The position numbers and the translations under genes were made by a program. A stretch of 64,000 bases of DNA, from the NCBI GenBank assembly GCA_904063045.1, contig CAJFCJ010000005.1, positions 4,369,689 to 4,433,688 of the forward strand. Reading direction: 5' to 3'. Positions within the stretch are counted from its first letter, which is position 1. Every line of letters begins with the position of its first letter. Below are positions 1 through 13,644 of this stretch, piece after piece. The notes under the pieces were generated by a model. The model saw nothing but the letters and a program-made list of their open reading frames with translations, was not told the DNA's origin and did no database searches. This stretch comes from Dimorphilus gyrociliatus. Its lineage: Eukaryota; Animalia; Annelida.

Positions 1-280
1 ATGAAAATTAAAGGAAGCAAATCACAATAGCAGCTTGTGCTACTTTTTTAGTTTTAGTAGTAGAAGTAGTATTTAATTATTCCCTATCTATTTTTCTTTC
101 CTTCTTTCTCTTTCTTTATCAATCTCTATCTATCTATCTATCTGTCTATCTATCCAGCTCTTCTATTCCATTCTTTAACTTTTAAATATTTCTACTTTTA
201 CTTCTGACGAATCCTTTAGCTTATTTGCTTCTCTTTTTCTCTAATTTTCTACCCTTTCGTTTGATCCTCAATCCCTTCCT

Positions 281-317
<37 letters not shown>

Positions 318-1553
318 CATTCTACATCCTATTACTCTCTCCCCCCCGTTCTTAATCGTCGTATAGCTTGTCACTTTGTACCCAACCTTCCTAAGCTTCA
401 CTGCGAATTTTCCTCGTTGCCCTCCCTCCGCAATCGGTAATATTGTATAAAGTATATACAATATGAGAGAAAGTGTGTAAACACTAGACAGTAGCATTGC
501 CTATAGGAAGATAGGGAAGAGAGGGAAGAGAAGAAATTTTCTAAAAGCGACTATATAATAGATTAGTAAGTTTATAAATTTATGGAGGAAAGTTCTATTG
601 GTGCTAATGAACAATCATAGAAGTCTATAGATCTGACATGGTAACTAGTTGATATATACTGTATATTGTATATACTTCGCAATGCCTACCTCCCCCTACC
701 CCCTTCCCCCTCCGCCCATCCCCTCCCAAAAAAAAACAATATAACATATACATAAATACGTATTTATTACGTAAAACTTGATTCTCTTCTTACTTGCTAA
801 TTCTTATCATGACGATAAGTAAGATTCTTATTATTTTTCATCGAAATCTTCATCTTTTTTATAAATTAAAAAAAAAAGAAAAGAAAGAAAAAAAAAACGA
901 TAATAGTAAAAATGATAATAAAAAAGAAAACCTTATTGATTTTTCTTTATTTTGCATATATATTTAGTTTTTTTTTCTTCTTCTTCTTTGTTTGTTTTTT
1001 TCTTTCTTTTCCTTTTTTTTACTTTCTTTATCTTATCTTATCTTTTTGTTTTTTTTAACTTAATCCAAAATTATTAATAAGGAATATAAAAACCTCTTTT
1101 TCATATTTTTCCTCTCCTTTTTACCTTTATTTTTTCTATTTTATTGATTTAATTGTCTGATTTTATTTCTTTCTTCTTTTCCTTCTCTTTTTCCGTATCT
1201 ATTTAACAGACCATCTTCCAATCTTTCTTTCAATCTTCCACTGTACAGTATATCTATGTGGATCTGTTTATCTGTACGTATGTTTGTTTGTATGTGAACG
1301 GAGGGGTTATGCATTATTGCTAAGCCAAATTGACCAGAATCTTGCGCATTACGTTGTCGTATTAATCAGTTAACTTTGGAAAAGTATAAATCTTTCGTAT
1401 TCCGTCTCTAGAGAAGCAATTTACGTCGTTTATTCAATTTCCGTTTGCCAAACACGACTGAGAATTTTTCGTACAGCGTCTCTCCAGGCATTAATTTAAC
1501 ACGATTCTTTAAAATAAATCGTTGACTGACAGTTTTTCACCAATTTCCCAAAG

Positions 1554-1749
1554 CTTGCCTCAAAGCTATATAACTCTATTCTGGGGATTGTTCGGCCTGA
1601 CATCCCTGAACACTGTCCGTCAAGGTCCGATGCAGGATTTTACAAAGACCATTGGGGAAGTTCTTTTAATGGCTTACCACGCACTCGGCGTTATAATGCT
1701 TATAAACATGTTAATTGCTATGATGTCAAATTCATTTCAAGATATAGTG
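1554..1749 (+). CDS. TRPC pore/S6 alternative exon A
   Basis: cccaaag|C TTG CCT CAA...GAT ATA GTG|gtacgg; 196 nt, phase 2 to phase 0; [65 protein letters not shown]. Confidence 0.9.
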
Positions 1750-3114
1750 GTACGGTTTCATTTTTTATTTTATTCTTTTGTTGTAGAAGCAACTTTTTTT
1801 CACTTTGATTTTTTTTTTCATTCTCTTTCTCTTTCTTTCGTTTTTTCTTTCTTTCTTTTTTACAATTTGTTTTTTTTTCTGCTTTTCACTTGATCATTTT
1901 TCAACTGCAAAACTATTTCTATGTTTTATAACTAGAACTATATGCATCTACTTATACGAATGTGTGTTATGGATACTGTATAACTTACTAATTAACTAGA
2001 CAATTAATGTTTAATTGTTCATGCGGGGGCATATGTAAGCACTCTCTATCTTCGATTAAAATTGAGTAAGGTTCTCTTATTCAACCACAATTCTTCTATT
2101 CCTTCTCTTCATTAATCCTTATTTGCAATTGACTATATACTGTAAGACGTTCAGTCATATTCTGTACATTGAATTTTTTCTTCTACCTTCCTCCTATCCA
2201 TATCTAATCTCGTAAATTCCCCAAATACCTTTAGATGTTTGGAGACGTATTTCAGAATTCGTTATCGGTCTTCTTTCTTCTCCTTTTTCTTCGCTGTTTG
2301 CTCTATTTTGCACATAAATATAAAAGCACACCTGAAGTAGAGTGTGTATTGTTTCACAAAACTATTCAGATAAGTGTACTAGAGTTGTTGGCCTATACAT
2401 AGTTTATTTCTCATTTAAGAAATTTAATATATTTCTACCTCTATTTCAATATCATCATTACGAATACTGCTGTTTTTCTCTTCCTCTTCTTCTTCTTCTT
2501 CTGACTAAACCAACCTCTTTACTCTCTTTCACTTACTTACATTTGATTTTATTTATTTATTCTTTTATTTATTTGATCACTGTCTTTATTATATTTCTAT
2601 CTTATTTTTGCACCTCCGTCCTCCCACGTGACCTTCCTTAACTTTGTGAGAATTGGTCCCTTTTTTTTGTGTTTTCTTCTTTGATACGCGAGAGAAAAAT
2701 TGTAATATTGTTTGCAGTCTATTACAAAGTTACATCACTCTATTCTGGGCCTTGTTTGGTCTGACACCTTTATCAACGGTTAGGGAGAGTTCAGTGCACG
2801 AATTGACGAAATCAGTGGCGGAAGCTTTATTTATGGCTTATCACGCCATGGCAATTATTGTTCTCGTAAACATGTTGATTGCCATGATGTCTAATTCTTT
2901 TCAAGATATTCAGGTATATAGGATTATCTCCAATAATCTTATTATTATCAATGCATATTTTACCTTATTCCCTTTTTTATCATATATTGCTTAGTATTTA
3001 TTTACTTTGCTCCCCTTAGTTTTCTTACCTACTTGATTTTTTTCTGTTAAATCCATTAGAAAGGTTCGAAAATCCAATTAGCTTATTCCCTTACAATTAT
3101 ATGCTCCTTCCTCT

Positions 3115-3155
<41 letters not shown>

Positions 3156-6100
3156 CTTTTCTCTTCCCTTTTATTTTTATCCTATAGAATACAGCAATTC
3201 GTTGTACGTAGACAATATAGATGATTTTCAGTGCGTTTTATTTTACTTTGTAATCAAACTGTTTTCTATTGTTGATTAAACGTTTAATATAGACGCCCAT
3301 TTCGAGATATGTGCCATAATGCTAAAGAATTAACTTTTTGTTATAATCACAATTCCGCTTGTACGACTTTGTGTGTGCGTGAGCGAGAGAGAGAGAGAGA
3401 GAGAGACAGACAGATAGAAAGTGAGTGAGAGAAAGAAAGAAGGAAAGAAAGAGTGAAAAAGAAAAAGAGTTAGCGAATGATTGACTGAGAGAAAGACAAA
3501 GAATACTTGTATACTCTTTTCTTGTAGAAAGATTGCTAAAACACTCTTATATGCATTAGATAAATGGTTAGTAGTGCGAATGCTAATATGCATGATCCGC
3601 ATGATTTTCTTTTCTCTTCAAAATTCAAATGAAAGAATGTATAGAAAGAGAAGAATATAAAGCGACAAAAACGACAAAATTACATAGAAATACTTTATAT
3701 TTTTTATGTAATGTATTAAATGGAATGATATTATTTCTCTTCCATCTTTCTATCTTTCTTTCTTTCTTTCAATTGCATTTATCTTTGAATTATTAATTAA
3801 AAGTAAATGAAAACATATATGTATTGTAGCTTTTTACATTATTATTTGATAATCAGGATCACGCGGATCGGGAATGGAAGTTTGCAAGATCTAAATTATG
3901 GATGGGATACTTTGATGAAGGGTCAACATTACCGACGCCTTTCAATCTAATTATTAGTCCCAAATCTATATATTACTTCTTAAAAAGAGTCAGGAGGCTA
4001 GTACAAAGCTGTCTTGTCAGTAAAACAGACAAACCGAGGAGAAAATCGAATGAAATGCATAATAAGGTAATTTTTGTATACTATTTATTTGTAATTGTTC
4101 AATTTATCGCTTTCTCCTCCTTCCTTCCTTCTCTCTCTCTCTCTCTCTCTATCATTTCCTTAAATAAAATAATAATAATAATAATAATAAAGTTTTAAAT
4201 AAAGTTTAGAATAGTAAAATTCTTTCATTTAGAAGGAAAACACACAAAAAAATCCTACTATTTTCTTTCACAGACTTACTGCACTTTACACGATTACGTA
4301 AGTTCATTTTCATTCATAAGATTAAAGGAATAGTTGACAATCATCATTTCTCTCCTTAGTTTATATAAATTTTTTACCTCTATTCTTTTATTCTTCTAGG
4401 ATCCTTTCTTGTTATTTGTTTCATTAATGAGATGTAATAAGCTTACTTTTATAACTTGGATTTTATATTATCATAATCGTTATTTTTCATCTGAAATAAT
4501 GCTATTATTCATGTTTTAGAGTTTTAAACGTTTATCTTAGACAGATAGAAATAACTTTGAGTTTTTATTAGATTTAGTTACTTTTTTTAACGCTTTTCCC
4601 CTCTTTCTTTCTCTCTCTCTCTCTCCTCATTCTTTTTTACCATAAGATTTTCCCCTGTTCTTTTTAACCTTCAGAACCAGCATGGAATTTCTACCATTTC
4701 CAATCATGTTCAAGCTTTAGATAATCCTGCTATGACGCCATCTAGCGCCAGTGATTTTGAGGTACATTGAATTGTGTTGTTTGGAGTAAGAGCACTATGA
4801 AGTGTAGCAGTGTATACAAACAGAGTAATAGGGAAAGTATGTCAAAAAAAAAACCCGAATTAATGGGCGAAGAAACAGAGGACAGCGAAGCGGGAGTGCT
4901 GATAAGTAGGAGCGGAAATAGTTGAGGATGAGAAGGAAGACGACTAGCAAAATCGACAAAAATCAAAAGAGAAATATAAATACATAGCGGACGATGTTGC
5001 AGTTATTCAATTACTTTCTCCTCCAGTTTTTTTTCCTTAAATAATAGAGATAAAACAAGGGAAAATAGTTCTTTTTGCAGTGTTGTTGTCCGTTTAAATA
5101 TGAATGAAATTTAGTTTATGTTTTTCTTTTTTGCATGATAAAGTAATTGTACTCTTCTTGTTTTCTCCCAGAGAAAGAGTCATTTCTTTCTCTTCTTTTT
5201 CCTTTGCATGTTAAACAAGAAACGCAAAAAAAAAAAAAAACAAAACAAGTCCATCATACAAATCGAAAAGAAAAATATTAACTTTCTTCATAATTACTAT
5301 TCTATTCAGAGGTCTAACAGTTTCCATTCTCAACCCGATGGTGACGCTTCTATCAACAGGAGTAATAGGCCTAAGTATCAAGTATGTTTTTTTTTCTTCC
5401 CAATTATGATAAAATATGGAAAAAAAAGAGAATTAGAGTTTGAGAGTGTTAAAACGAAAGATAAGCATTGTTTATCTGCCATTTTCCAGTCGTCCATCCT
5501 ACCTACTATTCTATCTATAAATTCCGTATAGAAAAGTATCAAACACTCGACCGGAAGAACGTAAATAGTTCTTGAAATATATATATGAAAATTACGATTG
5601 AAAACCTTTCAACTCTTTCCACTCCTTTCTCTCCTCTCCACAATTCTCTCTCTTCCATTTTCCATTATCCCTTCTCACAACATCGTTTTAAAGATCTTAT
5701 ATGAAAAAGAAAAAAAAAAGCCTACGAAGATAATATTGCAGATGATGATAAAAAAGAGAGGATAGGAAGAGTGAAAGATAGTTTAGTTTAATTATTTAAT
5801 GGGAGGATTTTGTAGACAAAATGCCAATTGGTAATAAATAAATTATTGGAAATTCTATCCTATATCTCTTTCACTTTTTCACTCAAACTCTTTTTGCCTA
5901 TCTATAAAATACAGTACATCTCTCTTTTCGTTCTCACCTGTTTGTAATATAATCAGAAATCATACCTTTATTCAAATCTAATAATTATAACAATAAGAAA
6001 GAATATATTGGTTTGAATATATATTTTGTAGATATAGGCTTTTCTCTCTCTCTCTCTCTCTCTCTCTTTTTATATCTATATATATATATATTTATACATA

Positions 6101-6410
6101 TATATTATAGATATAGATTTATTTGTGTATTGTTATTTCGAGCAATTTTCCTAATGAAGTTTTCGCAATTGCTTTTATTTATATTGAAAAGTAAACTAAA
6201 GGATATCCTATCGCGAATTATTCAGGTTTTGGGGCCTTTTGGAAATGGAGTATTGGGAATTTTTTCGTATTAAGTAAAGTAGACAGTAGTAATATTGGAT
6301 ATATATATATTTCAGATTAATTATTATACTTTATAAAATGTTTATTTATCTTTTTCGAACATCTCTTTTTCATTCTTTTTCTCCATTTTCCGATCCTGTT
6401 TCTCTTACTA

Positions 6411-6443
<33 letters not shown>

Positions 6444-7000
6444 ATACTAATACTAATACTACTACTCTTCATCATCGTCCTCCTCCATACTCTCTTTAGG
6501 AAGTAATGCGGAGACTCGTTAGCAGATTTATACATCAATGGAAAAAACAAATGAGGCAGGACGGTGTGAACGAGGACGATCTATTGGAGATTAAACAGGA
6601 TATCTCTTCGCTTAGATACGAACTAAGAGAGGATAGAAAAAGAGAATCCGCTAGAACGAGTAGCCATATTGAAACTGTAAAAAGGGACGTTATAAGATCA
6701 ATTCATCAGTCGAACCCTAGTATGGACCACGCGTGTGTTGTTGATCCAATGAGCGAGATAAGCCAAGCCGTCCATAGACCTCCTTCTCCCTCGTATGCCG
6801 CCTATAGTCCTCCCACGCTGAGTTTCCTCAATCCAAGCGAAATCGACGCGCTTCGAAAGGAAATTATTATTGGTTTAAAGGCAGAAATACGTGAATTGGC
6901 TATGGAGATGGTTCGTGATAATGGCAACAACGCAGCGGCACCTAGTGCACCATCTTTAAATGCTGAATTGTATCACACTCATCTATACACTCAGTTGTAA
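1554..7000 (+). CDS. TRPC: TRPC (canonical TRP / trp-gamma-like) cation channel, 3' portion; the 5' exons lie upstream of the window
   Basis: Exons with AG/GT boundaries: pore-S6 exon (1554-1749 or 2718-2913; LFW pore helix, NMLIAMM gate), 3857-4066 ([32 protein letters not shown] = TRP box EWKFAR), possible 4274-4297, 4675-4761, 5310-5381 (...RPKYQ), and terminal exon 6500-7000 ([11 protein letters not shown]...[21 protein letters not shown] coiled coil). Confidence 0.95.
2718..2913 (+). CDS. TRPC pore/S6 alternative exon B
   Basis: tttgcag|T CTA TTA CAA...GAT ATT CAG|gtatat; 196 nt, same phases as exon A; [65 protein letters not shown]. Confidence 0.9.
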
Positions 7001-7297
7001 AATGAAATGAAAAGGAAAGAGGAGAAGCTTCACAGTATGCAATGGACAATTTCAATTGATATACGAAAATATTATTCAACTTTATTATATCCTTTATCTG
7101 GCAGAGGATAGAGGATAAGAGGGACTATCTTAAACTGTATAGATATAGGAAAAACAGAGAGGATTATTCAAAATGAGAGGGAAAAAAATCTAGTCTTGAA
7201 TCCATCCATAAGGGTAAAAGCTGTTGTTTTCGCTGTTGCTATTACTACTTACTCGTATTACAACTATCATTTCAACATTTATTTAAATATAGATAAA

Positions 7298-7352
<55 letters not shown>

Positions 7353-8263
7353 GTGTCTTTCTCATATATGCAGTGTATATAGAAAAAAAAAACTGTACAT
7401 CAATATACGAAACAAGTATTAAAATGTAATTAAAGGTTGATAAGATTTGCTTCAGTTTTATTCTGACATATCACGCAGAATGATTTTATGCAAATGAGAA
7501 AGATGAATTTAAATATATTTCCTTATGTTTCTTCTATATTTTCTGTTTGTATCATCTTCCACGTTACATCTCTTCTCACTAACAAAACAAATAAACAAAT
7601 ATGCATGGTTTTACTATAAGAATAGATTAGATATTTTCTATGTCTATTAGTAAAGTAGTTGGAATTATAGAGGGGACAGTTTATAATTGTTTCTCTGAAG
7701 AGATGTTTAGTTGATTATTATCGTATAATTAAATGATTGATCTATTTTGGAGAAATGTATAAAAATGTCTATTGTAAGAATGATAACGACGATAATGATG
7801 CTGGTTATGATAATAACTATGATGTAAATGATACGGCATTGCTGGACAAATGCTTTATGTAATGGGGCTGTTTTTTAATGCAGATGCTAATAACTCTATT
7901 ATACTTATTTAACTATCGTACATTATACAGAATATACAATATACAATTATACGTTATCTTATCACTGATAGTTGTTATCTATTGGATTTTCTTTCTATGT
8001 ATATTAGTGTCTTTCTTCTTTATCCTCCTACTTGTCCTCCTCCTCCTTTCTCTTGTCTTAATCATATTTTGCTAACGATTGATGAGTCAATTGGGAGAAA
8101 TTGTTCATATTTTCCCCTCTGTTAAAGTTCCCTATCTCATTTTCTACTCAGTCATCTATATCTTGTTAATACTCTTTTTCATTCTAATCTACTAAATTCA
8201 ATTATTACGTTTAATATATTTTATTTAAATAAAACGTATTCTTATTGCAGAGTATATAATATA

Positions 8264-8295
8264 ATACTGTAATACTGTAATACTGTAATACTGTA
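8264..8295. repeat. 8-bp tandem repeat (AATACTGT)4 near the palindrome ATACTGTATATACAGTAT (about 8373-8390)
   Basis: Read directly between the convergent TRPC and CNBD 3' ends. Confidence 0.85.
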
Positions 8296-8447
8296 AAAAT
8301 ATTCCAGAGTATTTTAAATTATTCTCTGGATTCTTTAGATATATACAGTATATAGTGTATATACATACATATATACTGTATATACAGTATACGTATTTAT
8401 CTTGCTCTCTCTATCTTTTCGGTTGGTTTGCCTCTTTTTAACGGTTG

Positions 8448-11400
8448 CTACCTAAGCCTTGGCGATCTGGGAGTAATAGCCTGTTTGACGATATTTTCTT
8501 TGTATAAATCCCAGTTGGCTTTAGTCTGAGAGAAAAATATTCGATTATCATCTAAAAATAGACGAGAATATTTAATTAGGATGAGAAACCTGTAAATTGT
8601 GTTGGAGAACCCGATGAGACGGATATAGGGTTAATATTTGCCTTAAATGCTTCTTTACAAGATGATTAGCGTGCTTCATAAAAAACTTTTTTGACAGCAT
8701 TACGCATTCTGCCCCTCTCGATATTAGGCTTACAGTAGGTTGGTTCCAATCGATGCAATCCTCAAAATCCAGGGATGAGAGACCCTGAAGCGTTAAAAAA
8801 TAAAACAAAATTTATCCGACAATTTATAAGCCTAGAAAAGAGGGATCAAGGGGTTTCTCTTTCTCTTTGTAGGCGTTTTTTGTTTTCTTAAATATACTAA
8901 TACACATTAGTATCTATATAAACATAGAGTATACTGTAATACTGTATATACAGTAAATACAGGCACCTGAATAGATTTGAAAACATGCTTTAAAATTAAA
9001 ATATGCTATCAACTTACGAAAACGTCCCTAGGCTTTAAATGGTCAACTTGCACGAACGTTGTCTCAACTTCCTTTTCTCGTTCCGGTCTTTCCGTTTCGG
9101 CGCTCATTGGTATATTTCGTTTCTATTGAGCGCGAAAAGGAAGACAGACAAAGATTGAAAGTGAAAAATGATAAGATTTCAATTGGAGAAGAAAAAAAAC
9201 CACTCACGAAATGAGCTTTGGAATGTTTTCTAATTCTGTTGAAATTCTCTAGAGTTGATCTATCTTTACTGTCTTTAACGAAAGACGGCAGGGATTTTGC
9301 CGATTTAATTGGCGTTGACGACCGAACCTAAAAATTATCATTATTATTTCAAAAGTAACAACTAGCAATTATCTAGTGCCAAACAGTGTTCTACAATATT
9401 ATTATCTCTTTTTTCTTGACTATAGGCGAAAGGTGAATAAAAGAGAGAAAGAGAAAGAGATCGAGGGAGAGTGGGTGAGCGATAGAGAAGGAGAGACAGA
9501 GAGAGCTAAGAGAGACCGACTGAAGGAAAGAGTATGGTTTCCTATATAATCTATATAAAAGTAATATAATAAAGTCTCTCTAGCTGTCTATCTATCTATC
9601 TGTCTATCTATCTATCTCCCCCTCTCACTGTCTCGATCTCTATCTCTCCCTTCTTTCTTCCCTTTATCTTATAAATATAAAATATACATAAGCTGACAGT
9701 GAATTCAGTATACGAATTCGGCCTATTTAGCATATTAATACAAACAATATTTAGAAACCTTTATCAAGTCATTATATTGAGTTATTGCCCTTTTTAATTC
9801 CATAGGAAATTTTCCAACCATCGTATAGCTGCGCTTTATTCCAGAATCGATTTTTGGTTCTGTTTTATTTCATAAAAATTGTCTATATACATATATTATA
9901 ACAAGAATTAGTGAAACGTTCATTCTATTATAGCATATATACGGGTCTATCGCTAATGTATGCGATAATAATATCCTATAAATCCTTATGATATCTTAAG
10001 AGGAAGAAGAAGGATTATTTGTTGAAAAAATGATCAACTGATCTTTTCCTTCTCATCTCCTTCTCTTCTAATATTACTTATTACTTATTCGCTTTATCTT
10101 CGGTTGCCTAATAAATTTCTTACCCATTTGCCCGCTACCCGATAGTTTTGGTAGTAAAGGTACTTCTCGGTCGTATTTCGTCTTCGCCGTCTTCTTGACT
10201 CGACCAACAACCGATTTCAATTGCGTAATCACTTGACACGAGCCCTGAATAAAAATCAATTCATCATTTCTCTTTCACATTCCGGTGCTCCCTGTTTTTT
10301 TTCCTTTTGGACAAAACTCACCGATTTCACTATATAAATCCAATCTGATTTTCTGCTATCCTCTATTATAACCACTCCTCTTCTAAGATTATATACAAAA
10401 AACATATACAACATAACTATATAGACTCTATATATAAATATCTGTTACTTGAAGAAGTGAAAGAGACAATATTCTGGATGATCGAGGAGGATTTCTATAG
10501 GCCAGTTCTTCATAAATTCTATGGACCTAAACAACGAGAAGGAAAAGGAGAGGCAGAAAATGAAAGAGATAGTAGAGTGAAGCGAAATTGTTGAATTAAA
10601 AGAAAAGATAATAAAGGAAAAGGATAGGGAGAGGGAGAGAGAGGGAAAAAAAAATACTATTAGGCTTGATATTCCATATAATACTTTATACTGTATAATA
10701 CAGTCAATGCGGTGTTTGTTTGGCGGGAAAAGGATAATGGTTTTTACTTGAGAAATCGTATGTGTTGCGGTATATCTCCTGGATTTTGTCCACTCATGAA
10801 AATATCAAAGAAATCTTCCCTCTCAATTGCCAACACCTGAACTGTGCCTTGACTAGTAACCGTTGCCGTTCTCTTCGAACGATGTAACAGCGCCAATTCA
10901 CCGAAACTTGCTCCCCTTCTCATTATGCCTACAGTTCTTATACATATTTCTCCGCTTGAAGTTTTCTTTTCAATGATACTAACGGCCGCTGTTTACAATT
11001 GCTTAATTAGTCGCAATAGTTGAACTTGGAATAGAGAAGAAAGTAGGAAAAGGTGACTAAGAGAGAAAAGGGTTTCTGACCTGCTCCTGAAAGAATAAAG
11101 TAAAAATTTTCGGCGTAATGACCCTGTCTTATTATGACCCGAGAACCTGGTATTCTGCCAAGGGATGAAGGGATAAAAAAAATTGTATGACGTTTACTAA
11201 ACGTGTCCTCATTTCTATTAAAAAGCTTTACGTTTGCAGCCTGGCAACCCTGCATAGTTTCTCTTGCATATGTAAAGGATATTCGACGAACGATCTTAGA
11301 TTTTGAAGTCCGTATAAAACTATTTGAAGTTGGTCGTTGGTTCTTTGCTCCGGGGGTAGACTTAGAATGTGTTGAACTTCCGAGCTTAGAGTGACCTTAA

Positions 11401-13644
11401 CGAGGAGAAGGAGATGAGAAAGGAGTAAAATGGTAAAACAATTAAAAAACCAACTTCTGTTTTTGCTTTATAAAAGCTGACGTCAAAACTTAAACCGGAC
11501 TTTTGTAAATCCGAAGAGTAATTTAACGCTGCTAAATCAGTAAAAGTAGCATATTTTTCTCTTTGATCATCGCTATCCTTTTTCCTAGAAAAGAAAGAAA
11601 GTATAAAGGACCAACATATTAAATAAAGAAAAGAATAATAACAAGACTATTTATTTACGGATAAGAATTTAAGAAAAGAGAAGGTAAAGTTACTTTAATC
11701 ATTACTAACATTTCATTCAAACAGGATATCCATTTTTGAACGTTCACTATTTTCTTTGTGGCTTTACGAAATCTTTCTCTAGCCTGAAGACAAATAAAAA
11801 TAATTTTTAATCTTGTACTATTTTCAATCCTTCTGCCTTTCTTTCTTTATTTCTTTCTCTCTCTCTCTCTCTCTCTCTCTTTCACTCTTTTTTTATAGAT
11901 TTTATTTGTTTATTCTCTACCATTTTCTTAAGCTTATTCCTGTTAAAATTTTTAATTATTTGCTCTTTTTCTTCGTTAGTTTGTTGTTCTATTTGAAGAC
12001 TATCTGCTCGACGTCTAGACATTTGCGTTAAAATCTCTGCTGGTCTAATATTATTATTATTTTTATTAATGTTCATGTTCTGGCATTGCTGTGCGACTGT
12101 TAACGGCTCATTCAAAATCCTCGTTGGCCTACGTAATTTGTTCAATTTTGCATCGGATGATGTTTGGATCATTGGTAAGCCAGATTTCGAATTGGTCCTC
12201 TCTAAACGTCTACGTAACGAGACGAGCGACTTTTTACGCTTGAATTCGTAGCTCATCGGCGGAAAGTTGACCTCCGACTCTTTCTTCTCCGGCTCCTTAA
12301 CCTTTTCCTCTACGTCCTGTTCTTTTTTATGTGTTGTCGACTCTAGTTGACAAACAACCGCGTCAATCCTCTCTTCCGACGACGACATTGTCCGAACGAG
12401 AGCGGCTGTTCTCATTAATTGAGTAGAACTTCCGGTATACGACGTTTCCACTACTTGCCTCTCCCATTCGCTACCGAATGTTCCCGTTACGGCAGCAATT
12501 TCTAATAAACTTTGAACGTCTTCCCCAACCGACATGTTGTTTGTGTGGCTGAATTGTCTTCTTTTATTTTCCACTTATTTTCGCACTGTTATTCTCTATA
12601 ACTGTTGATTTTTGTTTCGAACCTCCTTCTCCTCCTCATCCGCCCCCTCCTCCTCTCTTCTTCGGTTTTTGTCTTCGTGTATTATATCGGAATATAAACA
12701 AATGAAAACAGCCAGGAATAAATCCAATATTAATCCGATAACAGGGTCTGTCGGTCGATTAGTTTGAACTAACTCTAAAGCCTACACGGTTATTAAATCG
12801 TCGTCCTCTCTGACAATTAATCTAGCAGTTGAACGCGCCGCTGATCGTTTCCCATTCAAATGACAGCTTTGTCGCTTTCACCACAACATTAACGTGATTT
12901 TTTCAAGTAGCTAGGCCTAGGTCATTCTAGTAGGGATTTACCTTACGCAATTGGCAATTGTTACTGTACCTTTTTACGGCGAACCTCCAAAGCTATTTGA
13001 TAGATTTTCGGTGTCTTGAAAGATTTCGGTATATTTAACGGTAGATCGTAGATACCCATACTGACTTTCTCTTCCAACTTTAAATCTCTCATCTTTGACC
13101 ATAATGATAGTTTTCCTTGTTCAGTTTTAGGCCTAGTTTTCACACTCCTACCTAGTTCATTTCCGTCATCTACCGCTTCCCTTTGTGGTTCCTTTTGTTT
13201 GAAACCTATAGTGGTTTGGTTCAAGTTTCTATTAGGCAAGACTGGACAAGTTTCGCCCTTATTTTCTATAGAAAACAAATGAATAACATTATTAAAAAAG
13301 AAGCCAAGAAGAGAAGAAGGAAAGAAGAAAGAATAAATAAAAAAAAACACTTAAAGTTTGGCCGATAAATGATATATTTGATTGATTGATATTTCATATT
13401 TTACTAGCTAGTGCATTAAATATATTCTACCTTCCTTCGGTCTCCATTTTAGTAACCTTTCTTTTAATCTTTTCCTCTTCTCGCGCTGCCTAGCCTCCTT
13501 ATCCTGCTCAGGCGAAGGTGTCTTCCTCTGTTCGTCGTCGATACATTCTTCAGGATCGCCTTTCGGTTTACTATAAAGTCTGGCTAGTAGGGTAATACGG
13601 TCGACCGAACTGCTAAACTCGTCGTACTCTTCTACCTTGGCCAT
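8448..13644 (-). CDS. Tandem cyclic-nucleotide-binding domain protein (CNBD2-like), multi-exon
   Basis: Minus-strand exons: LSLPPEQRTNDQLQIVLYGLQNLRSFVEYPLHMQEKLCRVA (about 11230-11396), RVIIRQGHYAENFYFILSG (about 11090-11160), GASFGELALLHRSKRTATV (about 10748-10988; phosphate-binding cassette), second CNBD (WPIEILL..RGVVIIEDSRKSDWIYIVKS|GSCQV; FVQVDHLKPRDVF|GL..SLISRGAEC), final exon TKANWDLYKENIVKQAITPRSPRLR*. The 5' end is uncertain. Confidence 0.85.

What the first reader, a model, noticed from the sequence alone, without database searches (positions are those of the whole stretch)
1554..2913. Mutually exclusive duplicated pore/S6 exons in a TRPC channel
Seen: two paralogous exons of exactly 196 nt, both phase 2 in and phase 0 out, 43/65 residues identical, both with intact splice sites and no stops. 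Including both would shift the frame, so only one can be used. The LFW pore helix and NMLIAMM gate are invariant, while the segment after the pore helix (filter/turret region) differs strongly ([20 protein letters not shown] vs [20 protein letters not shown], with different acidic residues). Established: this region sets TRPC selectivity and ligand binding, and pore-altering splicing is known for TRPM3. I am not aware of mutually exclusive pore exons in TRPC. Inference: one gene makes two channels (and mixed tetramers) with different permeation or pharmacology.
Basis: partly seen in the sequence, partly recalled or inferred. Interest (0 to 1): 0.8.

Follow-up and report, generated by a model that had tools for sequence, protein, structure and literature searches.

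The report
Swappable pore exons in worm TRPC channel
One TRPC ion-channel gene of a tiny marine worm holds two alternative copies of the exon that builds the ion pore, and assembled RNA shows each message uses one or the other, so a single gene makes two channels with different pore linings.

Summary

- **The exons.** Exon A (1554-1749) and exon B (2718-2913) are each 196 nt with AG/GT splice sites. They share 43 of 65 residues and encode the pore helix through S6 of a true TRPC channel (TRP_2, ankyrin repeats, LFW, EWKFAR).
- **Transcript evidence.** In the only public run that holds this locus, two spliced contigs exist: upstream exon + A + exon 3857, and upstream exon + B + exon 3857. No A-B joint was seen.
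- **Frame.** Using both exons or neither gives an early stop.
- **Selection.** Both copies are under purifying selection. Differences by codon position are 18/7/37, and third positions are as diverged as between genera. Each copy breaks only 1 of 29 columns that are invariant in relatives.
- **What differs.** The 22 differences lie in the outer pore loop and upper S6. They include the residue homologous to TRPC3 E630, TRPC6 E687 and TRPC5 N584, which sets Ca2+ permeability. The functional effect is inferred, not shown.
- **Precedent.** I found no paper describing this. RefSeq isoforms of a crab and a scorpion, and two RefSeq models of one spider gene, swap exactly this exon. Other TRPC genes carry independent tandem copies of it.
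- **Context.** This scan has noted many other exon pairs of this type in the same genome.

The parts
1..1553 (+). 3' part of the intron between the upstream constitutive exon and exon A. That exon lies outside the window at window -854..-374 (L011 146-626, G000:C5:4368834-4369314). The whole intron is 1927 nt.
   Evidence: Donor CC|GTAAGT read. tblastn of TRPC relatives places the upstream exon. The last 30 nt of that exon are attached to both A and B in spliced contigs.
1554..1749 (+). Exon A, 196 nt: pore helix (LFW), outer pore loop and S6. It was the form with the lower contig depth in the one run available.
   Evidence: Spliced contig record 2: upstream exon + 1554-1749 + 3857-, joint 1748->3856 GT..AG, depth 29.8.
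1750..2717 (+). Intron between A and B, 968 nt, with a pyrimidine tract at 1808-1863. It shows no similarity to the other introns beyond low-complexity tracts.
2718..2913 (+). Exon B, 196 nt, paralogue of A. It had the higher contig depth in the one run available.
   Evidence: Spliced contig record 4: upstream exon + 2718-2913 + 3857-, joint 2909->3853 GT..AG, depth 86.8.
2914..3856 (+). Intron between B and the next constitutive exon, 943 nt. It holds a (CT)n tract at 3100-3183 and a purine tract at 3381-3470.
3857..4066 (+). Constitutive exon with the TRP box ([15 protein letters not shown]), joined to either A or B.
   Evidence: The joint 4064->4272 marks the next intron.
6500..6997 (+). 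C-terminal exon of the same gene, ending ...[10 protein letters not shown] as in the Elysia TRPC P0027.
   Evidence: tblastn; translation.

Best explanation
The two 196-nt exons are a true mutually exclusive pair that arose by tandem exon duplication in a TRPC channel gene. The gene belongs to the orthologue group of C. elegans trp-1 and the 'transient-receptor-potential-like' proteins of molluscs, annelids and arthropods.

Shown: every mature message carries the upstream exon, then A or B, then the TRP-box exon. The two subunits are identical except for 22 of 65 residues. The LFW pore-helix motif and the lower S6 gate are the same in both.

The differences are:
- one pore-helix residue (G or A at exon position 11);
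- the residue after the FGL filter (Ser in A, Pro in B, Gln in relatives), which is homologous to TRPC3 E630, TRPC6 E687 and TRPC5 N584;
- the outer loop (QGPMQDF in A, ESSVHEL in B, so B has one more acidic residue);
- ten positions of upper S6.

Shown: the reading frame enforces exclusivity at the level of the product, because both exons together or neither give an early stop. Inferred: such messages are removed by nonsense-mediated decay.

Inferred: the choice between A and B is regulated by cell type or stage. Inferred: the two pores differ in Ca2+ permeability, conductance, block or lipid/ligand gating, and A and B subunits can mix in tetramers.
For: - Exon anatomy and frame.
- Two spliced contigs with identical flanks and no A-B joint, with 0 mismatches to the window.
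- Only one locus for these exons in the 77.9-Mb genome, so the joints are not from retrocopies.
- Purifying selection: dN 0.22 with synonymous sites saturated. Differences by codon position are 18/7/37, p=1.4e-5. Third-position identity between A and B is 28/65, as low as between species, while positions 1+2 are 105/130 identical. Each copy breaks 1 of 29 columns that are invariant in 14 annelid-type relatives.
- TRPC identity: TRP_2 at 1.4e-27, ankyrin repeats and Ion_trans. The exon aligns without gaps to TRPC6 673-735 and TRPC5 571-630.
- Role of position 17 and of the EFTE loop: PMC7565274 and PMC7116371.
- The same swap in orthologues: Eriocheir sinensis X2/X3, Centruroides sculpturatus X1/X2 and two Parasteatoda models differ only in this exon.
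Against: - Transcript evidence comes from one run of unrecorded library type, held as short assembled contigs. Contigs drop rare forms, so a low level of A+B inclusion cannot be excluded. The depths (A 29.8, B 86.8) are a poor measure of isoform ratio.
- There is no tissue or stage information.
- No functional data exist for either pore.
- Neither isoform carries an acidic residue at position 17, so the size of any permeability difference is unknown.
- The A/B pair was not found in the four relatives whose loci I could read. L005 and L009 hold one copy. L010 shows one copy, but the contig is only 1.8 kb. L006 has a different, older pair.
Confidence: 0.82

Rival explanations
1. Both exons are used one at a time, but the two channels are biophysically equivalent. 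The pair would be kept only because splicing control has been divided between the copies (different cells or stages use different copies), without any difference in the pore.
For: The gate, the LFW motif and 43 of 65 residues are identical. Many changes are conservative, such as I/V, L/M and T/S. Neither copy has gained a charged residue at position 17.
Against: Both copies sit on longer branches (0.45 and 0.36) than most single-copy relatives, such as L006_c1 at 0.08 and frag17 at 0.11. The changes cluster in the outer pore and upper S6, including the permeability-determining position. The same exon has been duplicated again and again in other TRPC genes, which is hard to explain without a benefit of pore diversity.
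Confidence: 0.13
2. One of the two copies is a dead or decaying duplicate (pseudo-exon) that is not part of functional messages.
For: The A/B pair is not seen in sampled relatives. One relative (L005) holds what looks like a decayed 45-nt remnant of a second copy. A has the weaker acceptor (AAAG).
Against: Both are spliced precisely to both neighbouring exons in RNA-derived contigs. Both keep the frame, the splice sites and 28 of 29 invariant columns, despite saturated synonymous divergence. Only 15% of neutral simulations stayed open, and 43 identical residues lies near the maximum (44) of 20,000 simulations.
Confidence: 0.03
3. The two spliced forms come from two different loci, from processed copies, or from another organism in the run, not from alternative splicing of this gene.
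For: The run's library type is not on record, and it also holds intron sequence at depth about 12.
Against: All laid pieces match the window with 0 other letters. A six-frame search of the whole assembly finds exons A and B only at this locus. Both contigs share the same 30-nt flanks from the neighbouring exons.
Confidence: 0.02

Closest known systems
Arthropod orthologues of the same TRPC gene (RefSeq 'transient-receptor-potential-like protein' isoforms): Eriocheir sinensis X2 vs X3, Centruroides sculpturatus X1 vs X2, Parasteatoda tepidariorum XP_071044300 vs XP_042896851
   Same: The proteins have equal length and differ only in the stretch that starts after ...AF.T and ends before DHAD. 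This is the position-homologous 65-codon pore-helix to S6 exon. Both exon types lie in tandem in one gene in a shrimp and in spiders (P0204, P0005, P0266).
   Different: It is a separate and much older duplication. The two arthropod types share only 23-28 of 63-64 residues and fall in different parts of the exon tree, whereas A and B both sit inside the annelid-type clade (support 96/99). It is known only as database models; I found no paper on it.
Mutually exclusive S6 and pore-region exons of voltage-gated channels, such as CaV1.2 exons 8/8a (IS6), and the idea of convergent exon duplication in ion channels (Copley 2004). From my own knowledge, not checked here.
   Same: A tandem duplicated exon of equal length encodes a pore-lining segment. 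One is used per message, and the two change pharmacology or gating. Homologous exons were duplicated independently in different lineages.
   Different: These belong to a different channel superfamily branch. In TRPC the exon covers the pore helix, filter, outer loop and S6 together.
TRPM3 pore splice variants and the TRPA1 exon 10a/10b pair of flies and mosquitoes (from my own knowledge, not checked here)
   Same: Alternative splicing in a TRP channel changes permeation (TRPM3) or sensory gating (TRPA1) from one gene.
   Different: As I recall, TRPM3 uses an alternative splice site inside the pore loop, not a duplicated exon. The TRPA1 pair lies outside the pore. Neither is a TRPC.
N-terminal alternative first exons of insect TRPL, TRPM and Pyrexia (PMC6137742, PMC7143563)
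   Same: They are called 'mutually exclusive exons' in TRP genes of invertebrates.
   Different: They change 9-30 N-terminal residues by alternative first exons. They are not homologous duplicated exons and do not touch the pore.

Membership tests
TRPC (canonical TRP) channel | N-terminal ankyrin repeats followed by the TRP_2 domain (PF08344) | tested here: met
   The upstream exon L003:6609-7505 matches TRP_2 at E 1.4e-27 and Ank_2 at 1.1e-13.
TRPC (canonical TRP) channel | Six-TM ion transport domain with the LFW motif in the pore helix | tested here: met
   Ion_trans matches the upstream exon at 2.1e-16 and both A and B. LFW is present in both. The motif's role is described in PMC7565274.
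TRPC (canonical TRP) channel | TRP box EWKFAR right after S6 | tested here: met
   [15 protein letters not shown] at 3857-.
TRPC (canonical TRP) channel | Closest solved structures are TRPCs | tested here: met
   All 31 PDB matches are TRPC3/4/5/6 or fly TRPgamma, and the printed TRPC6 alignments are gapless.
Mutually exclusive exon pair from tandem exon duplication | Adjacent homologous exons of the same length and phase with their own splice sites | tested here: met
   196 nt each, AG/GT sites, 43/65 residues identical.
Mutually exclusive exon pair from tandem exon duplication | Each exon is found spliced to the same upstream and downstream exons in RNA | tested here: met
   Records 2 and 4 of run X1.
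Mutually exclusive exon pair from tandem exon duplication | Never both, never neither, in mature messages | tested here: inconclusive
   No A-B joint and no upstream-to-3857 joint appear in the one run, but contigs drop rare forms. Both outcomes would give early stops.
Docking-site/selector (competing RNA pairing) type of exclusive splicing, as in Dscam and 14-3-3xi | A specific intron element that can pair with one selector next to each variant exon, conserved in relatives | tested here: inconclusive
   The purine tract 3381-3470 can pair strongly with the pyrimidine tracts after A (-78 kcal/mol) and after B (-74). It pairs about as well with many of the 40 pyrimidine tracts of the window. 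No relative with the same pair was available to test conservation.
Steric-hindrance type of exclusive splicing | The intron between the two variants is too short to be spliced | tested here: not met
   The A-B intron is 968 nt. By contrast, the trp-like pair in L012 is 35 nt apart.
U2/U12 incompatibility type of exclusive splicing | One U12-type donor (RTATCCTT) among the competing sites | tested here: not met
   The donors are GTACGG (A), GTATAT (B) and GTAAGT (upstream), read directly.

The most novel reading that the evidence does not exclude
The 196-nt pore-helix to S6 exon may be a recurrent hotspot of tandem duplication across invertebrate TRPC genes. Independent pairs exist in this worm (A/B), in other annelid-type genomes (a 196-nt plus a divergent 190-nt copy), in the arthropod orthologue (two old types, swapped in RefSeq isoforms), in an echinoderm-like contig, in a trp-like gene (copies 35 nt apart) and in a TRPgamma/TRPC4/5-like gene (47 nt apart). 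If all are used one at a time, swapping the whole pore module by splicing would be a general, convergently evolved and so far undescribed way for invertebrates to diversify TRPC permeation. Native TRPC currents there would come from mixtures of pore variants.
Probability: 0.5. Interest if true: 0.75.

Novelty: new member of a known kind. Interest (0 to 1): 0.6.

Why it matters
TRPC channels are usually thought to gain pore diversity by mixing subunits from different genes. Here one gene supplies two pore modules, and selection has kept both for a long time.

The 22 differences are a natural, selection-vetted mutagenesis of the outer pore and upper S6. They include the one position already known to tune Ca2+ permeability in TRPC3, TRPC5 and TRPC6. 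Comparing the two isoforms, or swapping single residues between them, is therefore a direct route to structure-function rules for TRPC permeation and gating.

The independent duplications of the same exon in several phyla and TRPC paralogues suggest a common selective pressure that has not been discussed in the papers I could search.

There is also a practical point. Gene predictors mishandle such pairs: some public models string both exons together (P0204, P0005, P0266), so TRPC catalogues of invertebrates probably miss isoforms.

Tried and rejected
- **RNA runs.** The look-up of sequencing runs listed no run on record as RNA, only X1 of unknown type. Laying X1 nevertheless showed spliced contigs.
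- **Third copy.** A profile scan of the six-frame translation of window 1-12000 and of L003 found only A and B.
- **The A/B pair in relatives.** L005 has one copy plus a 45-nt remnant. L009 has one copy, and so does the 1.8-kb contig L010. L006-L008 have a different pair. Whether B and the L005 copy are orthologous stayed unresolved. They share A11, P17 and S24-S25-V26, but overall identity does not support it and the tree is a polytomy.
- **Isoforms in mollusc, nemertean, amphioxus and octopus RefSeq clusters.** All members of each cluster have the same pore exon.
- **Chelicerate type-1 and type-2 proteins in different clusters.** These turned out to be paralogous genes, 85-90% identical elsewhere. 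Only the same-length isoform pairs count as evidence.
- **Competing RNA pairing.** Strong duplexes exist between purine and pyrimidine tracts, but they are not specific.
- **ESM Atlas search with the upstream exon.** It gave only generic channel clusters.
- **Literature.** Searches for pore-exon exclusive splicing in TRPC found nothing relevant.
- Full-length homology search and structure prediction of the two isoforms were therefore left out. The frame check of joined exons was done only inside a local script.

Full report
**1. The observation**

Reading the window and a script fix exon A at 1554-1749 and exon B at 2718-2913. Each is 196 nt. Exon A is preceded by AG (..CCCAAAG|C) and exon B by AG (..GTTTGCAG|T). 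Exon A is followed by GT (GTG|GTACGG) and exon B by GT (CAG|GTATAT).

Both translate cleanly from their second base. They share 43/65 residues and 133/196 nt. Their similarity ends at the exon borders.

The next exon, 3857-4066, begins [15 protein letters not shown].

The upstream exon lies outside the window. I located the window at G000:C5:4369689-4433688, fetched the flank and read the donor CC|GTAAGT at L011 626/627. The first base of A or of B completes the same Pro codon.

A local script shows four outcomes:
- upstream + A + 3857 is open;
- upstream + B + 3857 is open;
- A + B together stops 21 codons into B;
- skipping both stops 30 codons into the TRP-box exon.

**2. What gene it is**

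The upstream exons carry ankyrin repeats and a TRP_2 domain (E 1.4e-27) plus the first part of Ion_trans. A and B match the end of Ion_trans. All 31 solved-structure matches are TRPC3/4/5/6 or fly TRPgamma, and the printed TRPC6 alignments are gapless.

Full-length relatives found with a cestode protein as bait are the 'transient-receptor-potential-like' proteins of flatworms, molluscs, annelids, arthropods, echinoderms and nematodes, including C. elegans TRP-1.

The host genome has 77.9 Mb in 349 contigs and about 31% G+C. The exon groups with leech and other annelid-type sequences. The size and the '~350 scaffolds' fit the published Dimorphilus gyrociliatus assembly (PMC7854359). Another note of this scan names that species. 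I take this as likely, not proven.

**3. Are both exons used?**

The only public run that holds the locus (X1, 2017, library type not on record) is kept as assembled contigs. Laid on 1300-4300, it gives two 225-nt contigs.

- Record 2 holds 30 nt identical to the end of the upstream exon, then 1554-1749, then the first 30 nt of exon 3857 (joint 1748->3856, GT..AG). Its depth is 29.8.
- Record 4 holds the same 30 nt, then 2718-2913, then exon 3857 (joint 2909->3853, GT..AG). Its depth is 86.8.

This is the two-path bubble expected from mutually exclusive splicing. No A-to-B joint and no joint that skips both was reported.

All pieces match the window without a single difference. The assembly holds these exons only at this locus, so processed copies or another organism do not explain the joints.

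There are limits. This is one run. Contigs drop rare forms. Depth is a poor guide to isoform ratio, so 'B about three times A' is only an indication.

**4. Are both under selection?**

- dN is 0.22, while synonymous sites are saturated.
- 22 codons differ only synonymously and 22 differ non-synonymously.
- Differences fall 18/7/37 on codon positions 1/2/3, p = 1.4e-5.
- Third positions of A and B are only 28/65 identical, within the 20-34/65 seen in the other pairwise comparisons, which are mostly between species. Positions 1+2 are 105/130 identical.
- Of 29 columns invariant in 14 annelid-type relatives, A breaks one (V48M) and B breaks one (L38F).
- Under neutral drift at the observed divergence, only 15% of simulated copies stay open. 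Identity averages 27 of 65 residues.

The duplication is therefore old and both copies have been kept as working pore modules. Both also sit on longer branches than most single-copy relatives, as expected after a division of labour.

**5. Where the isoforms differ**

The gapless alignment to TRPC6 673-735 and TRPC5 571-630 gives a simple mapping: exon position i equals TRPC6 670+i and TRPC5 567+i.

Identical in A and B:
- the LFW motif (positions 8-10);
- the FGL filter;
- the lower S6 gate positions (I54, S58, Q62, homologous to the I-N-Q gate).

Different in A and B:
- position 11 (G/A);
- positions 17 and 19 (S/P and N/S);
- the loop at 23-29 (QGPMQDF/ESSVHEL);
- positions 32, 33, 34, 36, 38, 44, 45, 46, 48 and 50 of upper S6;
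- positions 2 and 65 at the two ends of the exon.

Position 17 is the homologue of TRPC3 E630, TRPC6 E687 and TRPC5 N584. Mutagenesis has shown that this residue sets Ca2+ permeability (PMC7565274). Positions 28-31 correspond to the TRPC4/5 EFTE sequence, whose charges affect conductance and Ca2+ selectivity (PMC7116371). There A has DFTK and B has ELTK, and B adds E23.

That the two pores differ in permeation, block or gating is a reasonable inference, but it is untested.

**6. How exclusivity is kept**

Shown: the reading frame makes double inclusion or double skipping unproductive.

Not the mechanism here:
- steric hindrance, because the A-B intron is 968 nt;
- a U12-type donor.

A purine tract in the B-to-3857 intron (3381-3470) can pair strongly with the pyrimidine tracts just after A and just after B. 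That is the layout of a downstream docking site with two selectors. However, it pairs as well with many other pyrimidine tracts of the window. This remains a weak lead.

**7. Relatives and precedent**

A profile search with exon B against 1.8 billion representatives returned many genomic open-frame fragments. Several of them hold two copies of this exon.

- **Annelid-type relatives.** L006-L008 and P0001 carry a 196-nt canonical copy followed after 424 nt by a divergent 190-nt copy with good splice sites. L009 and L010 have one copy. L005 has one copy plus a short remnant.
- **Tree.** A and B both lie inside the annelid-type clade (support 96/99), and the other pairs lie elsewhere. The duplications are therefore independent.
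- **Arthropod orthologue.** RefSeq isoforms of equal length differ only in this exon. These are Eriocheir sinensis X2/X3, Centruroides sculpturatus X1/X2, and two releases of the Parasteatoda tepidariorum protein. Shrimp and spider models contain both types in series.
- **Other TRPC genes.** A trp-like gene (L012) and a TRPgamma/TRPC4/5-like gene (L013) each have two 196-nt copies, only 35 and 47 nt apart.
- **Literature.** Full-text searches found no paper on exclusive pore exons in TRPC. The 'mutually exclusive' exons reported for insect TRP genes are N-terminal alternatives.

**8. Verdict**

This is a real, expressed, selected pair of mutually exclusive pore exons in an annelid TRPC gene. 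It is a new member of a well-known kind, namely tandem-duplicated exclusive exons in ion-channel genes. It has database-level precedent at the same exon in arthropods.

The scan has noted many such pairs in this genome, so the mechanism is common there. The interest lies in which part is swapped, the whole pore module including a known selectivity position, and in the repeated independent duplication of the same exon across TRPC genes.

Noticed in passing
L012:601-1027: A trp-like gene (ETSQSLFWASFG...) from a Logan contig has two intact 196-nt copies of the same pore/S6 exon (601-796 and 832-1027). They are separated by only 35 nt, too short for an intron, so the two could not be spliced to each other (steric exclusion).
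   Followed up: partly
L013:347-785: A TRPgamma/TRPC4/5-like gene has two 196-nt copies of the exon (347-542 and 590-785) separated by 47 nt. Both have AG/GTAAGT sites. Eight near-identical fragments from other samples exist (cluster of P0028).
   Followed up: partly
L006:6386-7195 (also L007, L008, P0001): Annelid-type relatives carry a canonical 196-nt pore exon plus a divergent 190-nt copy 424 nt downstream (only 45% identical, ends ...KSFHTIV). This is an older and different pair from the window's A/B.
   Followed up: partly
L005:10052-10117: About 100 nt upstream of the single pore exon lies a 45-nt stretch that repeats its pore-helix coding part (LFCAIFGLIPL, with Trp changed to Cys). 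It may be the remnant of a lost second copy. The surviving exon shares A11, P17 and S24-S25-V26 with the window's exon B.
   Followed up: partly
P0053 (protein fragment, Logan): A NompC-like fragment (...LLIAMMSDTYQRIQ) also holds two tandem copies of its pore/S6 exon, so the habit may extend beyond TRPC to TRPN.
   Followed up: no
P0204 (Penaeus chinensis), P0005 and P0266 (Caerostris): Public gene models read both alternative pore exons in series, with intron sequence translated between them. These are likely annotation errors caused by the exon pair.
   Followed up: partly
P0024 and P0040 (protein fragments): These are long open frames made of many tandem repeats of a piece of this exon ([18 protein letters not shown]... 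about 7 times; ...PLSTVRET... about 8 times). They look like satellite arrays seeded by part of a TRPC pore exon and its intron.
   Followed up: no
window 3381-3470, 1808-1863, 3100-3183: A 90-nt purine tract in the B-to-3857 intron faces pyrimidine tracts just downstream of A and of B. 12 of the window's 40 long pyrimidine tracts lie in the first 6 kb, inside this gene's introns.
   Followed up: partly
window 4067-4273: A spliced contig joins 4064 to 4272 (GT..AG), so a further exon of the gene starts at about 4274. It was not picked up by tblastn with relatives.
   Followed up: no
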